Positions 2,641 through 44,995 of a stretch of DNA of 64,000 nt are shown here, piece by piece. The position numbers and the translations under genes were made by a program. Each line of letters begins with the position of its first letter. Positions within the stretch are counted from its first letter, which is position 1. Source of the stretch: Convolutriloba macropyga (Eukaryota); the NCBI RefSeq assembly GCF_964194025.1, contig NC_134472.1:44206001-44270000 (forward strand), written 5' to 3'. The notes under the pieces were generated by a model. That model saw only the letters and a list, made by a program, of their open reading frames with translations, had not been told where the DNA came from and searched no databases.

Positions 2641-2830
2641 GATTTCAGCGATCTAACGCGAGATCTAACGCTAGTGTTCAGCGATCTAACGCGAGATCGA
2701 AAAAAAATTGAAAATCAATTTGAGTTAGATAGTTCAAGAGCACTGGTGCATTAAAAATTTATTGTTCATAACTAATTAATGGCTCTCGAACGAAGTTCAT
2801 AGCAATTATTGTAAAATTGTGTGTCTTTTT

Positions 2831-3203
2831 AATTGCTCTTGAACGAAGTTCATAGCAATGATTGTACACGTGTTGGTCTTTTTTTATGCAAATCTTTCGC
2901 TTGATCATTTTGCACTATTCTTCTAGAACATTCTTTGAGTTCGTTGATCATTTTTGAGTGATCTCTATTGCCCTCAATCTGTAGTAAAGCTTGTTGCTAA
3001 TATAAAATTGGTTGAGGCATTGCAAAATTAAGTGACTCATGGCGCAGTGGTTAGTGCGGGTGGTTATGAAGCGGGAGGTCAATGGTTCGAATCCCAGCGG
3101 GGAAAGATTTTGCACCCATAAAGAAAAATTGCTTTAGGCTACAGACCCTCAATTAAATTGCCTCGCCTGTCGAGCAGTTCTTCTGACTTTTGTCGGTTTG
3201 TTT
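2831..3203 (+). mobile_element. Non-autonomous Helentron-like element (HINE family 1) with tRNA-like cargo, nested in another family-1 copy
   Basis: 5' aattgctcttgaacga...agcaat (subTIR + IR). Degenerate 3' subTIR followed by hairpin ctgac-tttt-gtcgg. A second 5' end lies at 2778-2830 and its core sequence resumes after 3203. Confidence 0.7.
3034..3105 (+). pseudogene. tRNA-derived sequence with Pol III A and B boxes (not a functional tRNA)
   Basis: A box tggcgcagtgg (3040-3050) and B box ggttcgaatcc (3084-3094). Acceptor and anticodon stems do not pair. Confidence 0.75.
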
Positions 3204-4139
3204 TTTATGCAAAATTTTTGCTGGAATGTTTTGAATTTTCGAGTGACTTTTACGCTCTTGACTTTTGCGTATCGCGCTTTTTTAATTGTTGTCTCCATCG
3301 ATTATTCTTACGACCTGACTTCTTGGAATTGACTTTTTCAATGACTCCAGTGACTTCTACTGCAGGTCAATTGTGCGACTTTCCTCACTCGAAAAAAATC
3401 TAAGTAGTGCCAAACTTATATGCCCTAATTCTTTAGTGCTAGTCTTGAGTTTTTGATTTCATATCAATTTTGAAAAGCTCTTTTAAGGCTTTTTCCTTAT
3501 AGACCGTATGTGTCATAAAATTGACAGTCCGAATCTATGCCACAAAGTTTAGTTGTCTATTAAAGGACTGGTGGTCGATCTGTCTATCTAATTTCTTTAG
3601 TTGTTTCAATTCATGGAAAGCCACCAGCGTCTATCGTGGCTATTTTCCGGCAATCTGCCGGCTATGTTTTGCAATTTGACTTGTTATGCTAAGAATTTGA
3701 CTTGAGTTGGGGCACTGTCTTTCTTACGTTTCGAGGAGGAATATTGGTCGAGCGTCTTTTCTTTCTTGACCGGTAATTTTGTTGTGTATTTGAAACAGGA
3801 AACGAAACGCATGAAAACAAAGTTCTTAGGGCAAATTGCTGAAGACAATTTTTAGCGGAAAGAGTGCCTTTCTGTTCATGTCGCATTTTTGAGACAGAGC
3901 GAGCAAAGTAGGTGTGACAATTTTCTCTGGGCGAGCCGTTTTCGGTTTATACTAAATTTTTTGGCCGAAGTCTGTTTTTCTCATTAATATTTAATCAGCA
4001 AATTTTGAGAGATGTTTGAACTTTTCTTCTAGAACATTCTTTGAGTTCGTTGATTGCTTTTGAGTGATCTCTATTGCTCTCACTCCGCAGTAAAGCTTGT
4101 TGCTAATAAAAAATTGGTTGAGGCATAGCAAAATTAAGT

Positions 4140-4220
4140 GACTCATAGCGCAGTGGTTAGTGCGGGTGGTTATGAAGCGGGAGGTCAATGGTTCGAATCC
4201 CAGCGGTGGAAAGGTTTTTT
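4140..4220 (+). pseudogene. tRNA-derived sequence, copy 2, followed by a T6 run
   Basis: tagcgcagtgg and ggttcgaatcc boxes; tttttt at 4215-4220. Confidence 0.75.
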
Positions 4221-4840
4221 GCACCCATAAAGAACAATTGATCTAGACTACAGACCCTGACTTAAATTGCCTCGCCTGTCGTTCAAGAGCAATTCTTCCG
4301 ACTTTTGTGGGTTTGTTTTTCATGCAAAATTTTCGCTGGACCGTTATGACTTTTCGAGTGACTTTTACGCCCTTGACTTTTTCGTTTCGCGTGATCTAAA
4401 ATTCTCTCTCAAACACAATGTCAAGCAGCTGAACTCAGTTGGCGGCAATTTAATACTAAAAGTCAACTGAAAAGTGCGCTGAAACTTGTGCCATTTTTCA
4501 TTTAAAATCTTAGTAGTGGTATATGTTAACCTCTAATGTGGTTATTTGAAGCGCACTATTGAACTTCTTAGTCCCATTTGGACCCCCCCCCCCGACTGAA
4601 GCAGGCTGCAATTGATTAGAGCGCCCACTAGTCGTTCGAGCAATTCTTCCGACGTTTAGTCGGTTATGTTTTGTTTTGGCATTAAACCTATAATTTTCTC
4701 GTTATAAAGCGGAAGAGTGAAGATTTTCCAATAGTTAAAGTAAAGTTCTGCATTTCATTAACCGCCACGAAGCGATATCCAAATTTTTAATGGAGTCATC
4801 TTGGTTATTTTTCACGTACAAAAGGTGAAAATTGGTTTTT

Positions 4841-5127
4841 AATTGCTCTCAAACGAAGTTTAGCAATTATATTGGTCCTGTCGGTCGTTTTTTATGTGGT
4901 TTTTCGCTTGCCTGGTTTCCGCTTTCACAGAAACTGTTTTGGAGACTTATACTTGTGGTTTGAAGGGTGCTTTTCATTGGTTAACCCCATCACTTCACCC
5001 ACCCCCCCATTTGGTGCAGCCAAAGACAATCCTCCCACCGTTGCCCGCCCCCATAGCTAGCTACTGAGGAAGCCAACCGCTCGCCGGTCATTTGAGAGCA
5101 ATTCGCCCGACGTTAGTCGGTTATGTT
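4841..5127 (+). mobile_element. HINE family 1, complete short copy
   Basis: 5' aattgctctcaaacga + IR agcaatt. 3' tcatttgagagcaatt + hairpin ccgac-gtta-gtcgg + ttatgtt. Confidence 0.8.
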
Positions 5128-5143
5128 CTATCGTTTTATTTTT

Positions 5144-5515
5144 AATAGCCGCGAACCTGATAGTGGCTATTATTGGGGACATCGTGGTTTTTTTTAATTA
5201 ATTGTCTCCATCGATTATTCTGACGACCTGACTTCTTGGAATTGACTTTTTCAATGACTTCAGCGACTTCTACTGCTTTGCAGTTGAAATTCGTGTGCGT
5301 GACGTCATTTCTGCTTTTAGGTCAATTTTTTAGGGCTTTTTCTTTAGAGACCCTATGTGTCATAAAATTGACAGTCCGAATCTAAGCCAAAAAGTTTATT
5401 TGTCTATTAAAGGACTTGTGGTCGATCTGTCTATCTTACTTCTTTAGTTGTTTCAATTCATGGAAAGCCACAAGCGTCTATCGTGGCTATTTTCCGGCAA
5501 TCTGCCGGCTATGTT
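5144..5515 (+). mobile_element. HINE family 2
   Basis: 5' aatagccgcga + IR gtggctatt. 3' tcgtggctatt + hairpin ccggca-atc-tgccgg + ctatgtt. Confidence 0.8.
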
Positions 5516-5957
5516 TTGCAATTCAAAGAATTTGACGTGAGTTGGGGCACTGTCTTTGGTCGAGCGTCTTTTCTTCTTGACCGGTAATTTTGTTGTGTAT
5601 TTGAAACAGGAAACGAAAAGCATGAAAACAAAAATCTTAGGGCAAATTGCTGGACAATTTATAGCGGAAAGAGTGCCTTTCTGTTCATGTCGCATTTTTG
5701 AGACAGAGCGAGCAAAATTGGTGTGACAATTTTCTCTGGGCGAGCCGTTTTTGGTTTATACTAAATTTTTTGCCCGAAGTCTGTTTTTCTCATTAATATT
5801 TAATCAGCAAGTTTTGAGAGACGTTTGACCATTTCGCACTCTTCTTCACGAACATTTATTGAGTTCGTTGATCATTTTTGAGTGATCTCTATTGCTCTCA
5901 CTCCGCAGTAAAGCTTGTTGCTAATAAAAAATTGGTTGAGGCATAGCAAAATTAAGT

Positions 5958-6038
5958 GACTCATAGCGCAGTGGTTAGTGCGGGTGGTTATGAAGCGGGA
6001 GGTCAATGGTTCGAATCCCGGCGGTGGAAAGGTTTTTT
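5958..6038 (+). pseudogene. tRNA-derived sequence, copy 3, followed by a T6 run
   Basis: Near-identical to 4140-4220. Confidence 0.75.
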
Positions 6039-6659
6039 GCACCCATAAAGAACAATTGATCTAGACTACAGAACCTGACTTAAATTGCCTCGCCTGTCGT
6101 TCAAGAGCAATTCTTCCGACTTTTGTGGGTTTGTTTTTCATGCAAAATTTTCGCTGGACCGTTATGACTTTTCGAGTGACTTTTACGCCCTTGACTTTTT
6201 CGTTTCGCGTGATCTAAAATTCTCTCTCAAACACAATGTCAAGCAGCTGAACTCAGTTGGCGGCAATTTAATACTAAAAGTCAACTGAAAAGTGCGCTGA
6301 AACTTGTGCCATTTTTCATTTAAAATCTTAGTAGTGGTATATGTTAACCTCTAATGTGGTTATTTGAAGCGCACTATTGAACTTCTTAGTCCCATTTGGA
6401 CCCCCCCCCCCCGACTGAAGCAGGCTGCAATTGATTAGAGCGCCCACTAGTCGTTCGAGCAATTCTTCCGACGTTTAGTCGGTTATGTTTTGTTTTGGCA
6501 TTAAACCTATAATTTTCTCGTTATAAAGCGGAAGAGTGAAGATTGTCCAGTAGTTAAAGTAAAGTTCTGCATTTCATTAACCGCCACGAAGCGATATCCA
6601 AATTTTTAATGGAGTCATCTTGGTTATTTTTCACGTACAAAAGGTGAAAATTGGTTATT

Positions 6660-6961
6660 AATTGCTCTCAAACGAAGTTTAGCAATATTAGTCCTGTCGG
6701 TCGTTTTTTGTGTGGGTTTTTCGCTTGACCGACTTTCGCTTTCACAGAGACTGTTTTGGAGTCTTATACTTGTAGTGTGAAGGGGGTTCTCAATGGTTAA
6801 ACCCCCCCCCCCCAACCACTGCACATGGTTCAGGCCGGAAGGGCCCCGTGCAGCCAAAGACAATCCTCCTACCGTTGTCCACCCCCCTGGCTAGCTATTG
6901 AGGAAGCCAACCGCTCGCCGGTCGTTTGAGGGCAATTCGCCCGACGTTAGTCGTCTATGTT
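6660..6961 (+). mobile_element. HINE family 1 copy
   Basis: Same termini as 4841-5127, with a C-rich centre. Confidence 0.8.
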
Positions 6962-6977
6962 TTATCGCTTTATTTTT

Positions 6978-7458
6978 AATAGCCGCGAACCTGATAGTGG
7001 CTATTATTGGGGACATCGTGTTTTTTTTAATTCATTGTCTCCATCGATTATTCTTACGACCTGACTTCTTGGAATTGACTTTTTCAATGACTTCAGCGAC
7101 TTCTGCTGCTTTGCAGTTGAATTTCGTGTGCGTGACGTCATTTCTGCTTTTAGGTCAATTGCTTGATTTTCCTTACTCAAAAAAAATCTAAGTAGTGTCA
7201 AACTTATATGCCCTAATTCTTTAGTATTAGTCTTGGGTTTCTGGTGTCGAATATCAATTTTGAAAAGCTTGTTTAGGGCTTTTTCTTTATAGACCCTATG
7301 TGTCATAAAACTGACAGTCCGAATCTAAGCCAAAAAGTTTATTTGTCTATTAAAGGACTGGTGGTCGATCTGTCTATCTTATTTCTTTAGTTGTTTCAAT
7401 TCATGGAAAGCCACAAGCGTCTATCGTGGCTATTTTCCGGTAATCTGCCGGCTATGTT
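6978..7458 (+). mobile_element. HINE family 2 copy, longer internal region
   Basis: Same termini as 5144-5515. Confidence 0.8.
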
Positions 7459-7787
7459 TTGCAATTCAAAGAATTTGACTTGAGTTGGGGCACTGTCTTT
7501 CTTACGATTCGAGGAATTTTGGTCGAGCGTCTTTTTCTTGACCGGTAATTTTGTTGCGTATTTGAAACAGGAAACGAAACGCATGAAAACAAAAATCTTA
7601 GGGCAAATTGCTGGACAATTTATAGCGGAAAGAGTGCCTTTCTGTTTATGTCGTATTTTTGAGACAGAGCGAGCAAAGTAGGTGTAACAATTTTCTCTGG
7701 GCGAGCCGTTTTTGGTTTATACTAAATTTTTTGGCCGAAGTCTGTTTTTCTCATTATTATTTACTCAGCAATTTTTGAGAGATTTTT

Positions 7788-8201
7788 AACTGCTCTCGAA
7801 TGAAGTTTCAGGCTTTTTTGTAAATATGTTGGTCTTTGTAATGGAAAAGTTTCGCTTGAACGTTTTGACTTTTGAGTGACTTTTGCGCCCTGACATTTTC
7901 GTGCTGCGTGATCTAAATTTCACTCTGTCATAAAAGTCAGTTACTGAATTCAATTTGCGGCAGTTTACTACAAAAAGTCAGACGAAAAGCGCTCCCAAAT
8001 TTGTGTCATTTTTTCACTTAAATTCAAATTTTTGGGGGGGTTTTAGTGGTATATAATAACATCTAATGACGTATTTGAAGCCCCCCCCCCCCAAGTGAAT
8101 TTAGTTACAACAACCCCCCCCCCCGACTGAAGCAGGCTGTAATTGATTTCAGCTCCCACTAGTCATTCGAGTGCAATTTTTCGACGTTAGTCCGTTATGT
8201 T
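7788..8201 (+). mobile_element. HINE family 1, variant subfamily
   Basis: 5' tgctctcgaatga pairs with 3' tcattcgagtgca. Degenerate hairpin cgacgttagtcc + ttatgtt. Confidence 0.7.
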
Positions 8202-8474
8202 TATTTTGAACATCTGAGGCAATTATCGCGCTTTAAAATCCAGTTTTGACCTGATTTCGTTTTTTTGCCATTTTAGATGTTTTTGTATGCTTTTTCAACT
8301 TTTTAAGGTCTTTTGTTTAAAGCTGATCTTTTTATTATTAGTAGTCTGATGAAATTTGTGATCTGCTCAGGTTTTGGCTTTTTTTATAAGAAATTTGCGC
8401 CTTTTTTAATTAATTTTGAAGTTTTTTGCCTGTTCCGTCTGTTTCCCGTTAGTTTCCCATTAGTTTTTCTTGTT

Positions 8475-8876
8475 AATTGCTCTCGAATTAGAAGCAATTA
8501 TTGTAACCGTGTGTCTTTTTAATGCAAATTTTTCGATTGAACGTTTTGCGCTTTTCTTCAAGAATAATCTTTGACTTCTCAAGTGACTTTTTCACGCACT
8601 TTTTCTTGGTTTTCAAATGGTTTCAATTTCTCTCAATTCGAAATAAATTTTGTTGTTCGAACAAAACCGATTGTTAGAAACTTGGCGACAGGTCCCTGGT
8701 AGCCGAGTGGTTAATACCTCCGTCGAATCGACGGAATCGGGAGGACGGGATTCGAATCCTACTTTCGGATGATGGTTTGGTACCCATAATAAAATTGTCG
8801 CGGCTACAGCCCCTGAATTAAATGGAGCCGCTTGTAATTCGAGAGAATTTTTTTCGACGGTAGTCGGTTTATATTC
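8475..8876 (+). mobile_element. HINE family 1 variant carrying a second type of tRNA-like cargo
   Basis: 5' aattgctctcgaatta + IR agcaatt. 3' taattcgagagaatt + hairpin cgac-ggta-gtcg. Confidence 0.75.
8691..8770 (+). pseudogene. tRNA-like sequence of a different type
   Basis: A box tagccgagtgg, B box-like gattcgaatcc, and internal hairpin ccgtcga/tcgacgg. Confidence 0.6.
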
Positions 8877-9032
8877 AAGATTTCATTTAGAATTTTTTGG
8901 GAGGAAGACTGGAGGAGGGAAGAGGAATGAGGACACAAATTAAAGAGAATTTTTGAAGGGTCTCTTTGGAACATTTTGAGACAAAACTTTTTTTGAGATT
9001 AAAGTTTTTCATTACAGCGCTCCTATTTTTTT

Positions 9033-9543
9033 TACAATTCAAAGAATTTTGAATTGTATTGGGGCGCTGTCTTTTCACACATCTTCATGATTTTTGAAGT
9101 CAAATGGAGTAGTGATTTTGGTCACCACGAAACATGAAGTGAAGCGAAAAAGCGAGTGGTTTTGCGGCATGATTTTTTTTCACTCTAATTTTAAAGTAGA
9201 GTGGGAAAGCGGTGCTTTCGGTAGTGGTTTTTGTTCACATGCGGCAATTTCGCTTTGATTTTACTGTTTTTTTCAATTTTTTGGATCGTATTTTTTCTAA
9301 ATGGTTTTCCCAATCCATTCATAGTTTCTTCTACGCCTAGTTTTTTGTTTTAGCCAAATTTTCATTTCTCGCTAGTTGTTTGTTCAAATGCGGCATTTTG
9401 ACATTGATTTTCTGTTTTTGTTTTTTGATCTGATTTTTTGGAAATGGTTTTCCCAATTCACTAATAGTCCGTTCTAGGTCTGGTTTTTTGTTTAGTCAAC
9501 GAAAATTCTTTGAATTGTACGTCAGGGCTTGTCCTGCTATGTT
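9033..9543 (+). mobile_element. HINE family 3
   Basis: Perfect 18-bp subTIR pair: tacaattcaaagaatttt (9033-9050) and aaaattctttgaattgta (9502-9519). 5' IR ttgaattgta; 3' hairpin cagg-gcttgt-cctg + ctatgtt. Confidence 0.8.
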
Positions 9544-10296
9544 TTTTTTACCTCGTCGAATAAAATTCTTTTGCTTTACCTTAGTTCAGATTGTTCAACA
9601 TTTTGCTTGAAACCTATTTGACTTCTCTAGGCTAGTTTCACTCTTCTCACGTTCTGCTTAAAGTGTTTTTAGAAGCAGTTGCTCAGCAAAGCAATTCAAA
9701 ATGAACAGAGTCTGTATCAAAAAACGAAGTCGGAATTAGAAACGGGATAAATCCATAAAGCTTAATTTTAGATGCCAGTTACTCGAACTTTGTTCTTGGT
9801 TACCTTCTGTAATGCTTATTGGTATTGATATCTGCCCCTGTATGGTCTCACTACGAAAAAAAGTTTGTTTAGCTCCAAGATGACATCAAAATTGTTCACA
9901 CTTGTAAAATTATTTGTACAAAAATCATTTTTTCAATAGTTTTTTCTCTTTTTTCAATCCCAATTTTGGTTATTGGAGTCAACGGCGGCTATTTTCTGGC
10001 AATCTGCCGGGTATGTTTATTTTTTGGTTTTTTTCTCCCTCGGTGTCCCTTGCGTGTAAGTTTTGTGTTGTTTTTTTCCTATCGTTAATCGTTTATTAAT
10101 AGCCGCACAGCGATATCGGGGGCTATTATTGCGCTTCTCTTGGTTTTTCCGTCAAGATTTTTGTTACGACCATATGACGTCACAACCACTTCAAATCTGC
10201 TTTTTGTTCATTCGTTCATGCAATTTTAACGGTAGTGCGTGCGTGATGTCATTTTTCGCTCTTAGTGGAGCGATTTTTTTGTTCATTTGCGTGATT

Positions 10297-12140
10297 AATT
10301 GCTCTCAAACGAAGTTTTTTTAACGCGACCTGTCGGTCTTTTTTTAATGCGATTTTTCGCTTTACCGATTTTTCGTCTGACGCTTTTGACTTTTCGTCCT
10401 CAAAATCGGTATAGTCAGGTAGCGCCCAGCGGGCATTAAGTGCTCTTAGAGCCTTTCAGCTCTGTTTCAGCTCAAACTGTTTTGGAGACTTATACGTATA
10501 CTTATGGTGTGAAGGGCGGTTCTTAGAGGTTGAAGACACCCCCACTGTTGACCCCCACTATTGCCACCACCCCCACCACACTGTTGCCCCCCACCCCCGT
10601 GTTACCCCCACCCCCATCAGTCCCCGGTACTCCCCCCCCCCCCACCACCACCACCGTGACTACTGACGAACAACCGCTTGCTAAAAACGCAAATTTATAC
10701 TATGTTGTCACTTTTTTCAAGCTCTGAAAATTTTTGACATTTTTCGATTTTTATCAGCCTTAGGTGTCAAGAAACCTCCTTTAGGTTTTAATAAAAGGTT
10801 ACTGCATAGCTTCTAGTGGTAATGGAATGGTTTCAACATTTTAACATCACGAATTTTGGCATTTTTTGACAAAACAAGTTTTTACAATCTTTTGATTTTT
10901 TTTTCTTTTTTCAGGTCTTTCCAGACCCTGGGGCCAGAAAACATCCTCAGGGGTTTGATAATAATTTACTGACAAATTTTTATTGGCCATGGAATAGTTT
11001 TTCAACTTTTTTGATGTCACAAATTTTGGCAATTTTTGATAAAACTTGCTTTTTTCAGGTTTTTCTTGAAAATTTGTTGTTTTGTAGGTCTTTCAGCCTC
11101 AAGAGCCAAGAAACCTCCTCTAGGGTTTGAAAATAGGTTACTGTATAATTTCTATATTAAATGGAATGTCTTGCAAGATTTTAACATCACGAATTTTAGC
11201 ATATGAGCCTCAAGGGTCAGAAAACTTCCGTTAGGGTTTGATAATAAGTTACTGGAAAACTTTTGTTGGTCATTGATTAATTTTCAACTTTTTAATATTA
11301 CAAGTTTATCATTTTTTTTTATAAAACTTGCAATTTTTTAAGTTTTTGAATTTTTTTTAGGTTTCTCTAGCCTCAAGAGCCACGGAACTTACTGTAGGGT
11401 TTGATAATATGTTACTGCATAGTTTACATATGTAATGGAAAGTTCTTCAAGACTTTAAAATTACGAATTTAAGCAATTTTTTAAAATATTTTCAATTTTA
11501 TGTTTTTGATTGTTTTTCCTTCAGCAGAGGCCCTGGAACCTCCTCCAAGGTCTATTATAAGCTGCTGCGTAGTTTCTGAAGTTAAAGGGATGGTGATCGA
11601 ATTTTTTTCAAGTTTCAATAATTTTTGGATAAATTTTCAAATGTTAAAAGTGTATGGATCTTTATGAGCCTGTGAAACTAATTCAGGCTTGAAACAGGGA
11701 TACCGGATAGTCTCTTGAGACAATGAAATGGTTTTGATGAGATTTTAATTTCTTGGATTTTAGCAAGTTTTTGTTAAAAATTTTTTGACTCTTTTCAAAA
11801 ATTTTGAATGTTTTTATCCTTTTCTGAGCTTAACTATCATGGCCAACGAAGCTTTTCAAATCTTGCAGATGGGTTACTTAACATAACTCCAGAGACAGAA
11901 AGTAGTTTTTGAGCTTTTCACTGCGAAATCTGGAAGCTCTTCTTTTAGTTTTTGCAATATTTTGCAAATTTTTAAAATATCAGTTTTTTATTTGATTTTA
12001 CTAACAAGGCTAGACAACTAATAGTTGCAGAGTCGAATCAAGCTAAAGGGAACCTCACTAAACTGTGGCTAGCTATTGACGAAGCCAACCGCTCGCCGGT
12101 CGTTTGTGAGCCTTTCGCCCGACGTTAGTCGGTTATGTTT
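10297..12140 (+). mobile_element. Long HINE family 1 copy enclosing a degenerate tandem array
   Basis: 5' aattgctctcaaacga at 10297. 3' end with hairpin ccgacgttagtcgg-ttatgtt at ~12119-12140. Confidence 0.65.
10700..11990. repeat. Degenerate tandem repeat, unit mostly ~140-170 bp
   Basis: Recurring aaacctcct..agggtttgata..gttactg..aatggaat..aacatcacgaatttt at ~10771, 10941, 11111, 11221, 11385, 11537 and 11675. Confidence 0.8.
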
Positions 12141-13349
12141 AAATTTCTGGTCACACTTGACTTACCTCACTCTCAAAAATGACTTCCTCACTTTGAAATT
12201 GACTTTTGTTTACTTTAATTCAAAGAGATAAGGTCAAATGGGTGTGTGGCTGCTCTAAATGAAGTTTATTTGAGAGCAGCGAATAGAGGCAGCAAAAACT
12301 TATATAGATTTTTAATCAAAATGGAACATATCAGCCTTGATTGAAAAGACGATTTTTTTGTCTTTCTGTTTTTTAGACTGCAGATCTACGAAGCTATTGC
12401 GGCTATTTTCTGGCAATCTAACCCAAAAAATCTAGGGTCTATTAAAGGAGTGGTGGTCGATCTGTCTATCTTATTTCTTTAGTGGTTTCAATTCACGGAA
12501 GGCCACCAGCGTCTATCGCGGCTATTTTCCGGCAATCTGCCGGCTATGTTTGTAGTTTTGATTTTCCTTGTTTCTACTATTTGTAGGTCTAGTTGTTTAC
12601 TCAAATAATTTTGTTTGAATTGTATTTCAGGACCTGCTATGTGTTTGTTATTAAGGTTGTCTTTAGTCAAGTGTTTGGCTTAAAAAAAGAAAGAAGTCAA
12701 TTTGTTTTACCTCACTCAGCAAAATGACTTGCACGTTCTCTAGTTATTTAAGTTCACTTGAGGACACAAGATTAGAACTGTCTACTGTGAAATGGCCACG
12801 TTTTCAGTTTATTTATAGAATGTAAACTTTAAATGAAATTGAATAGTTGTCATCCACAAGTCTATTTTACTTGTAGGACATCAGCTTTTTAAATTTGAAT
12901 TGACAAGAATAATGTCGAATCTGAATTTATTCTGCAATAGATTTTTTCCGTACTGTTATTTTTCAAAGGGCTTGAAAAGTCAATTTTGTGGCTATTGTCC
13001 GGCAATCTGGTGGTTATGTTTTATGATGATTGATAGAAATGAATTAATCATAAATTTAAGGTATGCTTGGTTGGGGAACTCATGGTTGAAATCATTTCTA
13101 AGTTCAGTTGATTCTCAAAGTTTTCTTGCGATCAACCTCATGCCCACAAATCACCATGGTGCGCACGCAATTGAGTATATGCCTTTTGTTTGTTCCCAGA
13201 AACCCTCACAATCGGGTCTTCAAAATCTCGTCATCAACCCAGACAATGGGGTTGAACGGAAGAAATGAGCATTGTCCCCACTCATTTGGTGACAAACAAG
13301 TTCGCGCACAGCAATAATTGGGCAACTAAAATTGGGCGAGCTAAGACTG

Positions 13350-14940: not shown

Positions 14941-15640
14941 AATGCAAACGACTGTGTTGTGAGTAGCAAAATCAATGAATTAATTGATTTCAAGAAATTT
15001 GCCGTCTTGGAAGTTCTATTTTCTGTAAAAAGAAGTTGCTTTCACTCGATCGTATTTTTCCTTAAATGTATGAAAGCAGAAGTCGAGAATAAGAGCCCCA
15101 ATATTTCTGTTTTTATAGCTCTTCAGGTTCGTTTTTCTTTTAATGCAAAAGCGATAAGAGAGTGTTACTGGCTTTTTCTTGTTTTTACAGTTCAAAATAT
15201 ATATTTGATTTGCCCCGTTAACTTTTTAATATATCATTTGTCGACTTGAGACACCTCAACAAAATAGAAGCACTGCATTTTTCAACGCTTCGGTCGTATT
15301 TTTGCGCCGCTCTTGCTGACAAAGAATGATATCAAGTTGAAAAGACCGTTTTCATCTTTTTTTAGATCCAAGCGGAAGGGATTTTTAGTCTTGTGGCGGT
15401 TTTGTTAATTTTGTCAATGTGACAAAAATGTGTTGACAATTTTAACACTCAATTTTTGATGAAAATTTTTCGCACGTCTTTCTTTTAGTGTTGTAACGTT
15501 TGTTTAGTTGCTGCCGAGTTTGAAACTTATTGTATTTTTCCCCCCTCTATATGGATTTTAAGCACTAGATAAGGTTGACGTGACTTTGTTGTTGTGAAAA
15601 CATGGAAAATTTGTCCCGCAACGATGTGTTTGGTATTTAG

Positions 15641-16231
15641 GAAGACATGCGTATAACCAAGAGGATTACATTTTGTGCTCCGAGTATATGGGCATAGCAA
15701 TGAATCTATTCGAGGAAAAGCTTGCAACGGCGGAACAAGCGATCGAAGAAACCGTTTGTCCATCTTGTACAGAACCCAACAAAGATTCGATCCAACATTT
15801 TGTAGAAATTCTTGGCGCTGGTTACGATTACTATCACTACTGCGAATACAAATTGGGTAATTACGAAAGTGCGGTCAAATTGGCTAACAGATCGTTACAG
15901 CTGAAAGCAAGTGAGCGGCTGCAAATAAATGTTGATATCATAATGGGATATATAGAAGACAAAACGCAAATAAAAAAGGTTATAAAATTTAAACCCAGAG
16001 AAGCAGATTTATGCAATCAAGGAATTTCAAACAAAGCCGATTCCAATAATGGGGAAGCAAGAATGATGGAGAAACATTTCAGAAGTTGGGGAAAATGTGA
16101 TTATAACAGAAACTTCAATCCAGTATTGATATTGCAACCCATCAAAAGGGAGATTTATTCTGAAAATCCACGAGTTGAGTTCTGGCATGAATTCATTAGT
16201 TCAAGTGAAGCAGAAGAACTTAAAGAACAAG
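15641..16231 (+). CDS. P4HA: Prolyl 4-hydroxylase alpha subunit, penultimate exon (TPR substrate-binding domain, linker, start of catalytic domain); 5' boundary uncertain
   Basis: Translates LGRHAYNQEDY..., KCDYNRNFNPVLILQPIKRE and PRVEFWHEFISSSEAEELK. Donor G|gtaagt after 16231 (phase 1). Candidate acceptor tttag at 15636-15640. Confidence 0.8.
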
Positions 16232-16415
16232 GTAAGTCAACTTTTGAATTATGCAGTTTATTGTTGCTTTGCATTATTATGGATTCTGATTAATTGGGAT
16301 CTTTAAACGTCATAGACGGCAAGTTTGCAGTAATATAAGCAAATATTGTAAATTCATTTTTTTGGGAAGCAAAATAGTTGTGTGAGGGTTTTTGCGAAGA
16401 CCTCAGAAGTTTTCC

Positions 16416-16834
16416 AATTGCTCTCAAAGTTTGTAGCAATTATATATATGTCCTGTGGTCTCGTTTTAATGCGATTTTTCGCTTGACCGATTTTTCGTCT
16501 GACCCTTCGTCCTCAAAAACGTGATAAAGCGGTAACTCCCGGAGGGTAGGAAGCTCTCTTAGAGCCTTTCGGCTTACTAGACTCTAAGTATGCGATTCAC
16601 CGAAAATGTTCGGATACATAAATTCATGGCGTCAATGGCGGTTTTTCACCGCCTCACCCCACATCTCCCCCACCCTCTGCATATAGTTCCACCCGTAACC
16701 CAGCGTCCCCGTGCGCTCACCCCAAACCCCTTCAATTAAGCTAAAGTTACCCTCCCTTAATCGTAGTTAGCTACTGAGTAAGTCAGCAGCTCGACGGTCG
16801 TTTGAGAGCAATTCGCCCGACGTTAGTCTGTTTT
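16416..16834 (+). mobile_element. HINE family 1 copy inside the P4HA intron
   Basis: 5' aattgctctcaaa..agcaatt; 3' tcgtttgagagcaattcgcccgacgttagtc. Confidence 0.8.
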
Positions 16835-16990
16835 ACAAGTTTAACAAGGCTGATATCTTTGCCGTGAGCTTGTTTCATACAAACATTGCAACGTTTAACT
16901 TTTTGTCGAGAAAAGTGAGAACAGAGCAGCGTTGTACTGCTCAGAATTAGGGCTCCATCTGACACTTAAAATTGTTGTATTTTGTCATAG

Positions 16991-17508
16991 GACTTCCTGA
17001 GCTCTCAAGATCAGAAGTAGAGTCAAGCCCAAATGAACAGGATTGGGCCGAATACAGAGTTAGCCAGTCTAGCTGGTTGAGTCACGACATACCACTTGTA
17101 CGCTCAATAGGTGATCGGATTACACAAGCAACTAATCTCACAATGAAGTATTCTGAAGAGCTGCAGATTGCAAATTACGGCGTTGGTGGCCAGTACGAAG
17201 CACATTATGATTACACGGATCCAGACAATCTAGACGACCATGCTCTGGAAGCTGGTAACCGGGTCGCAACTGTCCTCATGTACCTGTCGGACGTCGAACT
17301 AGGTGGAACGACGGCATTTCCGAAGTTGGGTTTGAACGTAAAACCCGAGAAGGGAGGAGCTGTATTTTGGTACAATATTAAAAGAGATGGTCATGTTATA
17401 AAAGATACCCTGCATGCTGCGTGTCCTGTTATTGTCGGAATCAAATGGGTGGCCAATCAGTGGATCAGAATGCATGGACAAGAGTTCGTATATCAGTGTA
17501 TTGCGTGA
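16991..17508 (+). CDS. P4HA: Prolyl 4-hydroxylase alpha subunit, last exon (2OG-Fe(II) dioxygenase domain)
   Basis: Acceptor catag| before 16991 is in phase with the 16231 donor (KEQG-LPELSRS). Motifs LQIANYGVGGQYEAHYD (HxD), GNRVATVLMYLSDVELGG and HAACPVIVGIKWVANQWI (distal His and 2OG-binding Lys) are intact. Confidence 0.93.
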
Positions 17509-18102
17509 AATCAGATCTAGAAAAAATCTGAAACTGGAGCCATAAAAGACTTTTAGACAATCCATTTTCTGATTTAGATGTCGGAAAACTATTTTTACTC
17601 TAGCTTATGGTGATAGCATAATAATTTAACTATTCTTAAACTGTATTTAGTGAAATATACGAATAAGGTGATATAGGTTTTGCTACTTTGTTTTTGGTAG
17701 CCGCGAAACGATAGTGAGGCTATTATTTGGCTCATCGTGGTCTTTTTATTAGCCGCCGTCAGCCTCTCAACTGCTATTCTTTTGGTGCTCTCCAGGAAGT
17801 CATTGTATTGGTGCTCTTTTTAAAATCCAAAAACCTGGATTGTATTGGTGCGCTTTCTTTTTTATGATCTTAACTTCAATTTTTGAGGAGTCAACGAGAA
17901 GTCAAATTAAAGTGGCTATTTAAGTAACAATGGACTAGTAATGGGAGCGAAAATTACCAAACTACCTTAAAAGTAGAGTATGAAATTGGTGTTCGAACAA
18001 ATTGTCTGTTTTTGGTATGGAATTTTTTACATGCATGAATTTGACTTCCGTTTTCAGTGTCTGTATTTCTCTGGAGTGCCATTAAAGTATAATACATGTG
18101 TT

Positions 18103-18466
18103 TAATTGATCTCGAGAGAAGTTAAGCATTCATTGTAAACCTGTTGGTCTTATGCAAAATTTGGCTTTGCCGTTTTGACTTTTACGCCCTTGACTTTTTC
18201 CTTTCGCTTGATCTAAAGTTCTCGCAGTCACCAATTTCAGTAGCTTAACTCACGTAACGGCAGTTTACTAAACTGCGCCAAATTGGTGTGATTTTTTCAC
18301 TTTAAATTTGATTACTGGTTTTAGTGGTATATAATAACATCTCATGGTGTGATTTGAAGTCCTTCTTTTTTAATTTAGTTTCTTCCCGCGACTGAAGCAT
18401 GTACAATAGATTCAAGCTCCCACTAGTTGTTCGAGGTGTATTCTCTTGACATTGGTGGGTTATGTC
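18103..18466 (+). mobile_element. Degenerate HINE family 1 copy
   Basis: Colinear with 7788-8201, with eroded termini. Confidence 0.65.
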
Positions 18467-18814
18467 CTCATTAAATCTATTAGGAAGTGTCTAATCCCTC
18501 AATGATCAGCTGAGGCTTTTTATGACTTCGACACTTCGTTGGCATATTGGCGAATTTCAATTTTTGACTTTTATATTAATTCTATCGTCTTGCTTAGTCT
18601 CATTAACGATAGATCGCATAGGCTGCTAATGAGGCTTCAGGGAGTCAAATAAATTACATCATTTCATAGCTAATGGTTTTATGACTCGGCAATGATTGTT
18701 TTCATAAAATACTAGCCAGTTTTGAGGTTTACCTGTGATCATTTTCTTTTTGTTGTCTTATTAGGTAGTTTGATTTGCAACCCAAGTCAGCCTCTCTACG
18801 GCCTCTCTCCTTTT

Positions 18815-20038
18815 AACAATTCAAGAATGTTGGTGCTCTGTCTTTTTTGTAAGATATGTTTGCACGTTTTTTCTATGTTTTTTGTGCTTTCAAAACGGGA
18901 TTAACAGGTAACGCTCAGTGTGCATTAGGTTTCGTTAGATGGCTTCAGTAGGTTTAGAGCGTTAAATCGGGCCTAATTTCAAGGTGAAAAGGTTTTTTTG
19001 TTTTTGTGCCTGAAATGGTTCAATTTTTCGCTTTTTTGTCATTTTTTGTGTTTTCTGTTAGCAGGGTATAGAATTAACGCTTTTCAAAGTTCTTAAAGTT
19101 TTTTACAAGCCGTAAGATTTTTTGATGTCTCATTTTTGTGCTATATGTTTTGTTAACACAAACTTAAACACCAAAAATGATAGTGATTTTTCCAAGTTTT
19201 TGAAATTTGTCAGTTTAATTTCTATCTTTAGGGCTCAAAGTTTCATAACATGCCAATTTTTGTAAAATTGTTTTAATTTTTGTTTTTCGATTTTTCGAAT
19301 TTTAGCAACTTTTAATAAAATTTGCTGTTTTTCCATTTAAAAATAATTCTCCTTTTTTAATGTTTTTCTATTTGGCAAATAAAACTCTTTTAGGTCAATA
19401 AATTGAGTAACTGGATAGTTTTGTAGAAACAACTAATTGGTTTTGAAGATAATATTACAATTTAGAAACTTGAAGATAGTATTACAATTTTTAGAAACTT
19501 TTAAAATTTACAAAACTTTTTGAAATCTTTGTCAATTTTTGCGTTTCGTCTTTAAGGAAAAATGAAAACTTCGGGCTTGGAAATGGGTACTTTGGTAGTT
19601 TACAGAGACAACTATTTGGTTTTGCAGATTTTAGTTTGACAAGTCAGCCAGTTTTCAAAATTATGTTCATTTTTTTGGCTTGAAGATGGGCTACTGTAGA
19701 GACTCGTTAGACATTTATATCGATTTGAGGTAATAAATTGTAGCTTAATAATTTTTAAAGGAAATAAAGAAACCATAATACTGAACGGTTTTGAGATCAA
19801 GAAGCTTTCTCATATTGTGCGCTCGGGTCACTTTATATATTTCAATCTGAATTTAAATAAAGTTTGGTTTTCAGAGTTAAGCTTTAGGAAATTTTCTATT
19901 GTCAATAATTATTGTTTTAGCAGAAAATTTGTGATTATTTTGCTGGCATTTTTCATTTGGTCTGGCGTTCAGGTATCGTAATTTTTGGTTTTTCAATCAA
20001 TTCTTGGAATTGTAATTCAGGACTAGCCCCGCTATGTT
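18815..20038 (+). mobile_element. Long degenerate HINE family 3 copy with internal tandem repeats
   Basis: 5' acaattcaagaat..ttggtgctctgtc; 3' attcttggaattgta..caggactagccccg-ctatgtt. The interior resembles the 10.7-12 kb repeats. Confidence 0.55.
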
Positions 20039-22949
20039 TTTTGATTCGCTGCACCATTCGTTCTCGTTTTCTTTTGTTTTACAGAAGTCAGGACTTTCAC
20101 GTTTGACTCCTGGTTTACCGCTTTCAGTGTTTAAACTAAATGCGTTTCAAATTCTTTCCCTCATTGAAAGTAAAGTATGGAATGTGGTCAGTGTCAAAAG
20201 ATCAAAATCAGTAGAAACGGAATGAAACTATTAGAACTTTTGACACTTAGAAATAAAGGCTGTCAATTTTTTGCCACTTTTGTTTCCATCGCAATTGCAT
20301 CAAGCGATACAACGAGGGCTAGTTTTTGGCAAGTTGTCGGCTATGTTTAAGAGTGGGTTTTTTGGTTGCTAATGAGGCAACATTTAATCTAATAAATAGT
20401 TCAAGTTTTAAAACTAGTGGTTTTCATGTTTTTGTGACTATCCTTTTCCGAATGATATTACCGGATGCATTTTTAAGCTTTGCCTGTTTTTGTTATTCGT
20501 GTGCTTGGTCTTATCCTTGATCTCAATAATAATTTTTGTTTGACCTCAAGTGGGGAGTAATGTTTGTTAATTTATAGGTTTCAGGTTTTAGCTAATATGC
20601 TACTTTGAAGCCCTTCGTTTCTCAAAGATTTTTGTGTTTTCGGTGACCTTGGCTCTTTTTCTTTCTAATGGAAGTAATAAAATTTGGTTTGTGACTTTTC
20701 TTGCCATTGTTTCGAACAGATTGATTTTTGCCAATTTAGTCAGTCGTTTCCCCTTTCTCTATCTATTATTTATTTCGGCAAGTTTGTAATATGGTGTACG
20801 CAATATAAGGATGCGAGGCGGGGATAGCTGTATCAATTGATATAATCAGTCTCAGTTGATTTTTGCAAAACTAAATAAAAAATTTTATTTGTGCGCATTC
20901 AGGGTCGTTTGCGTCGTTTACTGTCAAAATTTGAAGTTGCTGAAAAATTGTTACTTTTCGGGTCATAAGTTAATTCAATTCTTTAGATTGTGTTTCAAGT
21001 CCTTGCCTGCTATGCTTTCTTTGTAAGATGTTTTCACATTTTTCCCCAAGATTTTGAGCTTTCAACGACAATCAGGTAACGCCCAGTGAGCAATAAGTAT
21101 TAATAGAGATCATAACCTGGCTTTAGTAGTCTCTCATTTGCTTTAGTATTCTCTCGGAGTGCTAAAACTGGTGTTGAAGGCCTAAATTCGAGGTGGAAAT
21201 GTCATTCTTGAGAACAAAATGTTTATTTTTTTGTTATTTTGCAATGTTCATAGAGCGCTCTTACAAGCCCCATAATTTTCTTTCATATCTGTGCTTCTTG
21301 TGCTATATGTTTTGGTAATGGAATATTCAGCAACCAAAATGGTAATTATTTTTGCAATTTCTTTCACGTTTTTTGAAAATGTTTGTTTTTTCGGTTTTTC
21401 GATCTTTGGGGGTCAATGGAACTTTTCTAGGGCGTGAAGATTGGTGGAGACGAAAAATGGTCTTGAAAAATATAACAGAAATTTTAGCGACTTCTCAAAA
21501 AAGCTTGTAATTTTTCCAGCATCTTTTCGATTGCAGCTTTTTGCATCTCTAATGGCGAGTTTCGCTTTTTAGGGTATGAAAATGAGTTACTTGACTGGTT
21601 CTAGAGATAATAAAGTAGTTTTTAAGATAAATAATTCAAGTTATAGCAACTTTATGTAAAAATTGCCGATTTTAAATGTGCAAAAGATTGTCATTTTTCG
21701 AGTTTTTAAATCTTTAGTGGCCAATAAATCATTTTTAAAGATTTTGTGGGAGTTAATGGGTATTTTAAAAATGATCAAATTTGGCTGTCAGGATTTTAGT
21801 TTAAGAATTTGAGCGATGCTTAAAGTGTTGCTCTTGTTTTGCTCTTATTTTGAGGGTTGGCTATCGGAAACGTAAATGATAAATGTTAAGGTACATCATT
21901 TGTTTATGCTGGGATTTTTCAAGGTTTAACAGTTTTTCTTTCCAATAAAGAGCTTGAAAAGGCGCGATTAGATAGATATATGATACAGATAGTTTAGTTT
22001 TTGATAGTGAGTACAAAATTTTTTCTCGTTTTTTCTGTCACACGATACTCTCATAAATCTCATTTTTTGAGTCTTACGGATCTATGCTGGAACTTCGTGA
22101 TACACTAACTCACAGTAAACAGTAATATTGAATTTAAAACTGTAAATTCTGAAAAAATTAACTTTCCGAAAGTTTTGATCATCAAAAAGTTTTAGCAGAT
22201 AAAATGTATCGATCAGAATTATAGCAGGTTCTTGTCATTCGTATGAACTGTTGAACAAAAGAATGTGCTAATGGTTGCTCATAACTAAAAAAAATACAGA
22301 TCATGTAGTCTTCTGAACCACTTCAACCAATTTCCAATAATTATTTCTACCTATCGACTATAATTGTTTAAAAAAAACTTGAACAGCCACTGCGGTCAAT
22401 ATCGCATTTGACGATTCAGAGCAAATGGAAGGTAAAATTTGTGTTTTGCTCTAGAAAAATTTTCTTCTTGATTTGCTTGACCTTAATTGTTCTCTTTCAG
22501 CATTTAAATTGTTGACTTAACTGCGTACCATTGAAAATGTGCTTAGAAGCTTAAAATTTGCCTTCTGATAACAGTAGTCGCCTGGAAAAAGCGCTAGACA
22601 CGAATGATTTAAATTGCGCACAGGCTAGGCGTTCATCCGATTCTAGTCAGTTTATGTTTAATGTGTTCTTTTAATGTTGACATTTGATGCCAAAGTTCAA
22701 CAAATTAGAACACATATTTCTTTGAATTGTGTCTAAGGATTTTTTCGATTCTATTGGATCTTTAAATAAGACAAAAAATAAATTTGCAACCAACATAAAT
22801 TCTGAAACCTGCAGACAAAATTGAGAACTGCAACGCTACACTTGTAACGTAACTATAAAAAATGTACAGAGCCCTACAGCCGAAATGCGATAATTTCATT
22901 AAATAGTTTTTCCTGCTGTTTAATAAGTCTTTTAAAACCGACAATTCCC

Positions 22950-44489: not shown

Positions 44490-44995
44490 TTGTTGCCAAT
44501 AAATACCCAATTCTTATAAAAAAAACCCAATTCTTACCAAACATTACCCAATTATTGACAAAAAATACCCAATTCCTGACGAAATAACACGTAATTTTTG
44601 ACAAAAATACTCAACTCTTGTAAAAATACCCAATTATTGCCAAAAAATACCCAATTCCTACCAAAATTTACGAAAACCACAAAATTTTTGTCAAAAAACC
44701 CAATTATTGCAAAAACTACCCAAATATTGCCAAAAATCACCCAATTATTGCTAAAAAATACCCAATTCGTGGCAAATAACACCCAATTCTTGGCAAAAAT
44801 ACCCAATTCTTCCCAAAAAATACCCAATTCAGGCCAAAAAATGCCCAATTCTTGGCAAAAATAACCCAATTCTTCCCAATTAATACCCAATTCTGAGCAA
44901 AAAATACCCAATTCTTGCCAGGAAAGACCCAATTCGTGGCAAATGATACCCAATTCATGACAAAAATTAATCAATTTGAGCTGAAAATACCCAGT
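44490..44995. repeat. 21-bp minisatellite (consensus ~aaaaatacccaattcttggca), about 23 units, subterminal in the Polinton
   Basis: acccaatt recurs every 21 bp. Confidence 0.92.

What the first reader, a model, noticed from the sequence alone, without database searches (positions are those of the whole stretch)
2778..21015. Three unrelated-sequence families of non-coding elements share one Helentron/HINE terminal grammar
Seen: each family has a 5' subterminal repeat that folds back on a nearby IR, the reverse complement of that repeat near the 3' end, then a short GC hairpin and a common (c/t)TATGTT terminus. No TSD was seen. Family 1: aattgctctcaaacga / ccgac-gtta-gtcgg. Family 2: aatagccgcga / ccggca-atc-tgccgg. 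Family 3: an 18-bp perfect pair at 9033/9502 with cagg..cctg. Established: this layout defines non-autonomous Helentrons (HINE, DINE-1-like), which insert in T runs. Inference: these are probably unannotated rolling-circle families mobilised by related Rep-helicases. The ORF track does not reveal them.
Basis: partly seen in the sequence, partly recalled or inferred. Interest (0 to 1): 0.8.

Follow-up and report, generated by a model that had tools for sequence, protein, structure and literature searches.

The report
Non-autonomous Helentron (HINE) repeat families
This stretch of an animal chromosome is packed with short non-coding passengers of Helentron rolling-circle transposons, present in thousands of copies genome-wide; it is a sound annotation of a known kind of mobile DNA, not a new mechanism.

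Summary
Window 2778-21015 is a mosaic, all on the + strand, of three repeat families (F1, F2, F3, each with subfamilies). All share one layout: TT, a 5' subterminal repeat that folds on a nearby inverted repeat, a T run, a body that often holds tandem repeats, the reverse complement of the 5' repeat, a GC hairpin, and (C/T/G)TATGTT followed by T.

Each family gives thousands of first-look candidates on all chromosomes. Paralogous empty sites show insertion next to or inside T runs with no target duplication. Elements nest in each other at fixed T-run hot spots or sit head to tail.

The genome encodes at least four lineages of Helentron-type Rep-helicases. One young lineage (at least 9 copies, 94-100% identical; OTU, Rep, PIF1, APE-like endonuclease) ends in the F2-type 3' terminus, with unrelated flanks in 4 of 4 copies examined. 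Its last 60 bases are 88% identical to the window's F2c copy. Its 5' end was not reached. F1 and F3 are not securely tied to a partner.

The local copies at 3.5-7.8 kb are partly a 1.84-kb tandem duplication.

Two earlier unchecked notes of this scan describe the same system elsewhere in this genome.

Verdict: new members of a known kind (HINE/DINE-1-like).

The parts
2778..2826 (+). Solo F1-type 5' module (subTIR plus fold-back IR)
2829..3206 (+). F1c element with a tRNA-like internal segment and a decayed 3' end
3278..3668 (+). F2a copy lacking its 5' module; 3' subTIR, hairpin and CTATGTT at 3634-3668
3481..7790 (+). Tandem duplication (period about 1.84 kb, 92% identity) of a composite of F2a, an F3-like 5' part, F1c, F1b and F1a
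4316..4670 (+). F1b copy, 5'-truncated, ending in hairpin CCGAC-GTTTA-GTCGG and TTATGTT (second copy at 6134-6489)
4840..5127 (+). Complete F1a element, 288 bp (second copy at 6659-6961)
5143..5515 (+). Complete F2a element, empty at the F3 hot-spot T run (second copy at 6977-7458)
7786..8201 (+). Complete F1b element
8473..8870 (+). F1d element with a tRNA-like internal segment
9033..9543 (+). Complete F3 element. 18-bp subTIR pair at 9033-9050 and 9502-9519, internal 143-bp repeats at 9230-9493, hairpin and CTATGTT at 9523-9543. Sits inside a T run.
9550..10017 (+). Body and 3' terminus of the F2c element that hosts the F3 copy. Its last 60 bp are 53/60 identical to the 3' end of the autonomous group D Helentron.
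10097..12550 (+). F2b element split by a nested F1a
10296..12139 (+). F1a element (1.84 kb) nested in F2b, with about 150-bp central tandem repeats at 10728-11517. Paralogous empty sites were found.
12610..13020 (+). Solo decayed 3' ends: F3-like at 12613-12643 and F2-like at 12988-13020
16416..16832 (+). F1a copy with a decayed terminus, inside the intron of a prolyl-4-hydroxylase-like gene (exons end at 16229 and resume at 16989)
17696..17866 (+). Stack of three 5' modules (two F2-like, one F3-like), each sitting in the T run of the one before
   Evidence: read from the sequence
18102..18465 (+). Diverged F1b-like element (67% identity)
19966..21018 (+). Matching stack of 3' ends: F3-like at 19966-20042, F2-like at 20316-20349, decayed F3-like at 20972-21018
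   Evidence: read from the sequence

Best explanation
These are non-autonomous Helentron elements (HINEs, the DINE-1/pearl kind): short non-coding DNAs that keep only the end signals of rolling-circle transposons and are moved in trans by Helentron Rep-helicase-endonuclease proteins encoded elsewhere in the genome.

Shown here:
- The common end layout in three families.
- Thousands of dispersed copies.
- Insertion in or beside T runs without target duplication.
- Strict orientation, nesting at fixed T-run hot spots, and head-to-tail joins.
- A young autonomous Helentron lineage that ends in the F2-type terminus.

Inferred from what is known of HUH/Rep transposons and of the Helitron Helraiser (PMC4778049):
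- Rep nicks the T-rich boundary at the 5' end. The 5' fold-back and subTIR probably position it.
- The helicase peels off one strand.
- The 3' subTIR, GC hairpin and YTATGTT act as the stop and cleavage signal.
- The released, probably circular, single strand is joined next to a T in a T-rich target.

Because an element's own T run and 3' terminus are themselves good targets, elements pile up in the same orientation. A missed terminator makes composites that move as one unit.
For: Layout and boundaries:
- In 44 copies from other chromosomes TT precedes the 5' subTIR every time. Similarity stops at YTATGTT plus T.

Copy number and spread:
- First-look candidates number 3196 for F1, 5010 for F2 and 6715 for F3, with scored hits on C1-C16.
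- Summed word depth over the HINE bins is roughly 4000-5700 times single copy (a rough figure only).

Empty sites:
- F3 in L022 against L035, flanks 100% identical: a 9-T run is split 6+3, with nothing duplicated.
- The window's F1 at 10296-12139 against L032, L040 and L035: gaTTaa in the empty site becomes gaT[T-AATTGC...TATGTT]Taa.
- F2 in L031 and F1 in L006 and L012 behave likewise.

No coding capacity: no ORF above 100 aa in 2778-12560.

Autonomous partner:
- Group D (C16, C6, C1, C2, C4 and others; at least 9 copies at 94-100% identity) has OTU (weak), DUF6570, Helitron_like_N at 67 bits and PIF1 at 102 bits.
- It has endonuclease motifs ETW, GDFN and SFHRP, with a sub-threshold Exo_endo_phos_2 match.
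- Its Rep motif 2 is VEAQYRGSLHLH, which carries the S that PMC4067079 gives as diagnostic of Helentrons.
- Four copies end in GGCTATTTTCCGGCAATCTGCCGGGTATGTT(T), after which the flanks are unrelated.
- The last 60 bp are 53/60 identical to window 9958-10017.

Hairpin stems differ between families but always pair.
Against: - The 5' end of group D was not reached.
- The endonuclease calls rest on motifs and on two Pfam matches below threshold (E 0.003 and 0.009).
- F1 is linked to a Helentron only by adjacency at one locus (C8). F3 is linked only by a decayed F3-like end inside group D.
- No allelic (polymorphic) empty site was seen. The one unique-context copy tested is present in two individuals.
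- The exact cut is ambiguous by 1-2 nt: T^T, T^N or A^T.
- No Helentron has been shown to transpose experimentally, so the mechanism is by analogy.
Confidence: 0.9

Rival explanations
1. They are MITEs: deletion derivatives of cut-and-paste (DDE) transposons that move by excision and leave a target-site duplication. Related bivalve and insect elements were first classed this way, with an 'AA' TSD.
For: Short, non-coding, high copy number, with inverted repeats 11-18 bp long. PMC3879986 classed the similar DTC84/pearl elements as MITEs.
Against: The inverted repeats are subterminal and the two ends are asymmetric, with a hairpin and heptamer only at the 3' end. Empty sites show no duplication, including one pair with 100% identical flanks. 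Insertion is orientation-specific into T runs and not A runs. Head-to-tail joins occur. A Rep-helicase element carries the F2 end.
Confidence: 0.03
2. They are non-autonomous canonical Helitrons, moved by the RGLPHAH-type Helitrons that are also abundant in this genome.
For: About 20 of the Rep loci are of the canonical type. Canonical Helitrons likewise make no TSD and have a 3' hairpin.
Against: Canonical ends are 5'-TC...CTRR-3', inserted between A and T. The canonical group A here ends in ...CTGCTAG followed by T. F1-F3 instead start with TT + subTIR and end in YTATGTT, and have subTIRs that canonical Helitrons lack. The F1 3' fragment 1.5 kb beyond a group A copy lies outside the shared unit.
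Confidence: 0.03
3. They are tRNA-derived SINEs copied through RNA by LINE enzymes.
For: F1c and F1d hold a tRNA-like stretch with box A-like and box B-like motifs (TAGCGCAGTGG, GGTTCGAATCC) near 3040-3095, 4150-4210, 5968-6030 and 8700-8775.
Against: The stretch is internal, not at the 5' end, and is absent from F1a, F1b, F2 and F3. ARAGORN and Rfam find no tRNA. There is no A-rich or simple-repeat tail and no TSD.
Confidence: 0.02
4. The pattern is a local product of segmental or tandem duplication, not transposition.
For: 3481-7790 is a 1.84-kb tandem duplication, so several local copies arose that way.
Against: Each family has thousands of candidates on all large contigs, with unrelated flanks.
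Confidence: 0.01

Closest known systems
DINE-1 / INE-1 of Drosophila and their Helentron partners (PMC4067079)
   Same: 5' subTIR with a nearby IR that folds on it, 3' subTIR, short 3' stem-loop, central repeats, preference for TT, no TSD, very high copy number, and an autonomous partner that shares the ends.
   Different: No sequence similarity was tested or expected. Here the palindrome sits only 7 nt from the end and the subTIR about 30 nt from it. Three or more families share the last heptamer YTATGTT.
HINE-Mo and HINE-Cq of the mite Metaseiulus and of Culex (PMC4067079)
   Same: [quoted passage not shown]
   Different: In the mite the subTIRs are themselves palindromic and no separate IR exists. 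Here the 5' arm pairs with a separate IR, as in DINE-1.
Cg_HINE of the Pacific oyster and the pearl/DTC84 elements of bivalves (PMC7492417, PMC3879986)
   Same: Left module with subTIR, IR and a GTCY-type microsatellite. F1 has GTCC-TGTC-GGTC here. Satellite-like central repeats, right module with subTIR and palindrome, T-rich targets, no TSD, frequent insertion into other repeats.
   Different: In the oyster no autonomous Helentron could be related to any Cg_HINE. Here one lineage shares a 3' terminus with F2. Whether this genome is a bivalve is not known to me.
Helitron2 (Repbase class; described in PMC4067079 and PMC5148889)
   Same: Asymmetric terminal inverted repeats plus a 3' palindrome, and insertion at TT.
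   Different: Helitron2 proteins lack the endonuclease. The lineages examined here show APE-type motifs after the helicase.
Canonical Helitrons, for example Helraiser (PMC4778049)
   Same: HUH Rep plus PIF1-like helicase, a 3' hairpin acting as terminator, terminator bypass that creates composites, and no TSD.
   Different: Canonical ends are TC...CTRR inserted at A^T with no subTIRs. The canonical lineages in this same genome have RGLPHAH Rep motifs and a CTAG end.

Membership tests
HINE / non-autonomous Helentron | Subterminal inverted repeats of about 11-15 bp, a few nt from the 5' end and upstream of the 3' palindrome | tested here: met
   F1 has 16 bp, F2 11 bp and F3 18 bp. The 5' copy starts 1-2 nt after the boundary T. 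The 3' copy lies 2-4 nt before the hairpin.
HINE / non-autonomous Helentron | Short palindrome (stem-loop) close to the 3' end | tested here: met
   Stems of 4-6 bp end 7 nt from the terminus. They are predicted to fold, and the stems differ between families yet keep pairing.
HINE / non-autonomous Helentron | No target-site duplication | tested here: met
   Paralogous empty sites for F1 (3 events), F2 (1) and F3 (several), one with 100% identical flanks. No allelic empty site was obtained.
HINE / non-autonomous Helentron | Insertion into TT or T-rich sequence, with strings of T at the boundaries | tested here: met
   TT precedes the 5' motif in 44 of 44 copies. T runs of 2-10 lie at the junctions. 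In one F1 case the empty site has a single T (T^C).
HINE / non-autonomous Helentron | No coding capacity; often central tandem repeats or a microsatellite | tested here: met
   No ORF above 100 aa. Tandem repeats lie at 9230-9493 and 10728-11517. A GTCY-like remnant sits in the F1 5' module.
HINE / non-autonomous Helentron | Interspersed, high copy number | tested here: met
   3196, 5010 and 6715 first-look candidates, with scored hits on all large contigs.
HINE / non-autonomous Helentron | An autonomous Helentron shares both termini | tested here: inconclusive
   The 3' terminus is shared between F2c and group D. The 5' terminus was not reached. F1 has adjacency only. F3 has only a decayed internal end in group D.
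Helentron (autonomous, group D and the C8 locus) | Rep with the Helentron-type motif 2 (S between G and P/L before HxH) | tested here: met
   RGSLHLH, RGSAHVH or RGSVHIH in L046, L050, L060, L064-L066 and L068-L070, against RGLPHAH in the canonical loci. The criterion comes from PMC4067079.
Helentron (autonomous, group D and the C8 locus) | AP-type endonuclease fused after the helicase | tested here: inconclusive
   The motifs N.QS, ETW, GDFN and S.H/QRP occur in the right order after PIF1 in both lineages. Pfam Exo_endo_phos_2 scores only E 0.003 and 0.009, below the cut-off. There is no PDB hit by sequence.
Canonical Helitron (non-autonomous) | 5'-TC ... CTRR-3' ends, insertion between A and T | tested here: not met
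   The ends are TT-subTIR ... YTATGTT. The A^T reading is possible for F1 and F2 only by shifting the cut, and not for F3 in T runs.
MITE of a cut-and-paste transposon | Terminal inverted repeats flanked by a target-site duplication | tested here: not met
tRNA-derived SINE | 5' tRNA-related Pol III head, 3' tail, TSD | tested here: not met

The most novel reading that the evidence does not exclude
The hairpin plus YTATGTT may be a universal stop signal read by several diverged Helentron Reps, so that families with unrelated subTIRs form one cross-mobilising network.

Group D would be the worked example: an F3-lineage Helentron that landed in the hot-spot T run of an F2c element, lost its own terminator and now stops at F2c's. 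In it one hairpin arm and the heptamer are mutated in all copies.

Targets would be chosen because they mimic an element's 3' end. F1, F2 and group D each hit the same GCGTGAT^T site in different copies of F2b, and resident TATGTT-T ends are hit as well. This would parallel the end/target equivalence of IS200/IS605.
Probability: 0.3. Interest if true: 0.55.

Novelty: new member of a known kind. Interest (0 to 1): 0.35.

Why it matters
For this genome the result is practical. Three high-copy families and their subfamilies, which an ORF track cannot reveal, can now be masked and named, and the T-rich, one-strand mosaic at 2.8-21 kb is explained.

More generally, links between HINEs and their autonomous partners are scarce outside Drosophila, a mite and a mosquito. 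The oyster study could not make one (PMC7492417). A young, apparently intact Helentron lineage that shares a terminus with a HINE family gives a concrete enzyme-substrate pair for the first transposition assay of a Helentron.

The composite structure of that lineage and the recurrent hot spots are testable hints about how termination and target choice work.

Tried and rejected
- The F1 3' end 5.6 kb downstream of a group A Rep (C5:77.5 Mb) first looked like an F1 partner. It was rejected. Homology among group A copies stops 1.5 kb earlier at a CTAG end, and group A has the canonical RGLPHAH motif.
- The C8:8.816-8.823 Mb Helentron (OTU, DUF6570, Rep, PIF1, endonuclease motifs) is followed 130 bp after its stop by a complete F1 HINE, with no other terminus within 1.1 kb. 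Only one 70% relative exists, so its ends cannot be defined and the link to F1 stays a suggestion. The expected chance overlap of my two hit lists is about 0.03, and this was noticed after the fact.
- The 2493-aa OTU-Rep-PIF1 ORF family (L071) has no F1-F3 termini within 10 kb.
- I walked upstream of group D for its 5' end and met only satellite. A search with the satellite unit was not scored because it had too many candidates. The junction pattern search gave 593 hits against 7 in the control, but the listing was too long to locate the copy I wanted.
- ARAGORN and Rfam give nothing for the tRNA-like segment.
- The Atlas search named the neighbouring gene's family but not the organism. Run names are coded.
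- Laying contigs of three runs on 12600-18590 showed no insertion polymorphism.
- The periodic AACATAA at 34.5-37.3 kb belongs to an unrelated 809-bp tandem repeat without the HINE layout.


Full report
WHAT IS THERE

The window is part of contig C5 of a 1.18-Gb animal assembly. From 2776 to about 21020 the + strand is T-rich (AT skew -0.07 to -0.24). It consists largely of short repeats, all in the same orientation.

The 18-bp F3 pair is perfect. The composite 3' end patterns occur 5 times (F2) and 3 times (F1) against 0.00 expected in shuffles. Perfect hairpins followed by NTATGTT cluster at 3662-12544 on the + strand. As single-stranded DNA the three 5' modules fold back with z-scores of -4.7, -3.5 and -5.9, and the 3' GC hairpins are predicted.

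Part of the local abundance is secondary. 3481-5327 and 5328-7160 are 92% identical, and the unit runs on to about 7790. This is a 1.84-kb tandem duplication of a composite of five element pieces.

FAMILIES AND BOUNDARIES

Searches of the window's own genome gave 3196 (F1), 5010 (F2) and 6715 (F3) first-look candidates. The 40 scored hits of each search lie on many large contigs.

I pulled 44 further copies with flanks from the fetched loci. The consensus layout is the same in all three families:
- TT (44 of 44 copies);
- a 5' subTIR whose first 7-9 nt pair with an IR 6-16 nt downstream;
- a short TATTGGGG / GTCY-like stretch;
- a T run;
- a body;
- the reverse complement of the subTIR;
- 2-4 nt;
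- a hairpin;
- (C/T/G)TATGTT followed by T.

Similarity to other copies stops at these points. The families are unalike in the subTIR, the hairpin stem and the body. They share the module order, the TT start, the stretch after the 5' hairpin and the last heptamer.

No ORF above 100 aa lies in 2778-12560. Bodies hold tandem repeats (9230-9493 in F3, 10728-11517 in the long F1).

EMPTY SITES

Many copies sit inside other repeats, so paralogous empty sites were available among the fetched loci.
- The cleanest case is F3 in L022 against L035. The flanks are 100% identical. A run of nine T in the empty site is split 6+3 in the filled one, with nothing duplicated.
- The window's own long F1 (10296-12139) is nested in an F2b element (10097-12550). 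Three empty F2b copies read ...gcgtgaTTaaattt..., and the filled site reads ...gcgtgaT[T-AATTGC...TTATGTT]Taaattt...
- An F2 in L031 entered the homologous site of another F2b copy. So did a group D Helentron (L081).
- F1 in L006 entered a site with a single T (gaT^Cta).

In every case the inserted piece can be written as T + subTIR ... YTATGTT placed after a T. It can equally be written one base to the left, placed before a T. The cut is ambiguous by 1-2 nt, and no target duplication exists.

F3 is found again and again in the T run that follows the 5' module of F2 (L017, L020, L021, L022, L031, L034, L040). The window's two F2a copies are empty there. This may be a hot spot, or one event amplified as a composite. 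I did not separate the two.

Three of 44 5' junctions abut the TATGTT-T end of another element. F3 head-to-tail tandems are visible in the hit lists.

In the window, 17696-17866 is a stack of three 5' modules, each in the T run of the one before. Matching 3' ends are stacked at 19966-21018 (read from the sequence).

These features are the ones that define HINE/DINE-1-like elements in PMC4067079 and PMC7492417.

AUTONOMOUS ELEMENTS

Pfam Helitron_like_N matches about 90 places in the genome. Rep motif 2 splits the fetched loci into two groups:
- RGLPHAH, the canonical Helitron type, in about 17 loci;
- RGS[LAV]H.H in L046, L050, L060, L064-L066 and L068-L070. The S is the residue that PMC4067079 gives as diagnostic of Helentrons.

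Group A is canonical. Similarity among its copies ends at ...CTGCTAG followed by T.

Group D (L060, L064, L066, L068, L069) has at least 9 copies at 94-100% identity.
- On C16 the + strand carries ORFs with OTU (weak), DUF6570, Helitron_like_N (67 bits) and PIF1 (102 bits) in a 1251-aa frame.
- That frame ends with ...NVQS...DIVFLCETW.... A further exon has ...VGDFN...SFHRP... and a sub-threshold Exo_endo_phos_2 match. This is an AP-type endonuclease by motif order, not by score.
- About 190 bp after that exon lies a 65-nt stretch that aligns to the F3 3' end. It is decayed: one hairpin arm and the heptamer are changed. A 25-nt internal F3 motif lies nearby at 96% identity.
- It is followed, exactly as in the window at 9544 onward, by the body of an F2c element (76-79% identity).
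- In four other copies (C6, C1, C2, C4) similarity runs through this F2c body to ...GGCTATTTTCCGGCAATCTGCCGGGTATGTT(T). After that the flanks are unrelated to each other.
- The last 60 bp are 53/60 identical to window 9958-10017. That is above the 80% that PMC4067079 uses for a subfamily.

So an apparently coding-competent Helentron lineage moves with an F2-type 3' terminus.

Its 5' end was not reached.

A second Helentron lineage sits at C8:8.816-8.823 Mb. It has OTU, DUF6570, Rep, PIF1 and the motifs ETW / GDFN / SDQRP, and its Rep is 46% identical to group D. A complete F1 element follows 130 bp after its stop, and no other terminus lies nearby. With only one 70% relative its ends cannot be defined, so the link to F1 is a suggestion only.

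HOW IT MOST LIKELY WORKS

Shown: the structure, the spread, the insertion behaviour, and a Rep-helicase lineage that shares one terminus.

Inferred, by analogy with HUH transposases and with Helraiser, in which a 3' hairpin is the terminator and can be bypassed (PMC4778049):
- Rep cleaves at the T-rich 5' boundary.
- The helicase displaces the strand.
- The 3' subTIR, hairpin and heptamer stop and release it.
- The strand is joined beside a T.

The stems differ between families but always pair. The heptamer is shared. This fits a structural stop signal plus a short cleavage motif.

Group D is most simply read as an F3-lineage Helentron that sits in the F2c hot spot, lost its own stop signal and now ends at the next one. 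The alternative is an F2c-ended Helentron that carries an F3 fragment as a passenger. That is not excluded without the 5' end.

COMPARISON AND NOVELTY

The elements meet the tested defining features of HINEs. They fail those of canonical Helitrons, MITEs and SINEs (see the membership table). The closest described relatives in layout are DINE-1, with its separate IR, and the bivalve Cg_HINE/pearl group, with its GTCY-type microsatellite and satellite-like core repeats.

I could not consult Dfam or Repbase and do not know the species. Whether these particular families are catalogued is therefore open.

Two earlier first-reader notes of this scan (s1-254648, s1-214649) describe the same multi-family system elsewhere in this genome. 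They are unchecked and add no independent evidence.

The kind is known, and the members and the F2-to-group D link are new to my knowledge. Interest is modest.

Noticed in passing
window 3030-3100, 4145-4215, 5965-6030, 8700-8790: The F1c and F1d subfamilies carry an internal tRNA-like stretch with box A-like (TAGCGCAGTGG) and box B-like (GGTTCGAATCC) motifs. ARAGORN and Rfam call no tRNA. It may be a captured SINE head or tRNA pseudogene.
   Followed up: partly
L078, L083 (C16:33938357-33944900) and L084 (C4:49039800-49042800): The group D Helentrons carry multi-kilobase arrays of a roughly 100-bp satellite upstream of their ORFs: at least 6.6 kb on C16 and at least 3 kb on C4. The unit is so abundant genome-wide that a search with it could not be scored.
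   Followed up: partly
window 15673-17508: A prolyl-4-hydroxylase-like gene (2OG-FeII_Oxy_3 by Atlas features). A contig of run X5 joins 16229 to 16989, so the intron that holds the F1 copy is spliced out and the gene is probably expressed.
   Followed up: partly
L071 (C2:35745001-35755000), ORF 1075-8556: A 2493-aa open frame with OTU, a weak Helitron_like_N and PIF1. At least seven loci have frames of 2468-2515 aa, several of them clustered at C10:43.25-43.64 Mb. The termini are unknown, and motif 2 does not fit either the Helitron or the Helentron pattern I searched for.
   Followed up: partly
G000:C5:77505302-77510770 and relatives (L041, L051, L054, L061, L062): A young canonical Helitron lineage (94-99.5% identity) with an intron-split Rep, an RGLPHAH motif and a CTAG 3' end.
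   Followed up: partly
genome-wide; window 10289-10296: The junction GNGTGATT + AATAGCCGCC occurs 593 times against 7 for the control pattern. F1, F2 and group D each entered the same GCGTGAT^T site in different F2b copies. A small hairpin (CGCTC..GAGCG) lies about 25 nt upstream. The site may mimic a 3' terminus, or the count may reflect amplification of a composite.
   Followed up: partly
window 33900-39400: A roughly 809-bp tandem repeat (81-89% identity between units), A-rich on the + strand, without the HINE layout.
   Followed up: partly
window 13000-15000 and 1-2500: Another high-copy repeat: summed word depth is 80-400 times single copy at 13000-14999. The long open stretches look like retrotransposon remnants but were not analysed.
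   Followed up: no
window 4587-4597, 6401-6414, 8081-8130, 10540-10655: Long C runs and CCCCA-like tracts are a regular part of F1 bodies just upstream of the 3' module.
   Followed up: no
window 44493-44966: A 21/42-bp minisatellite of about 22 copies.
   Followed up: no
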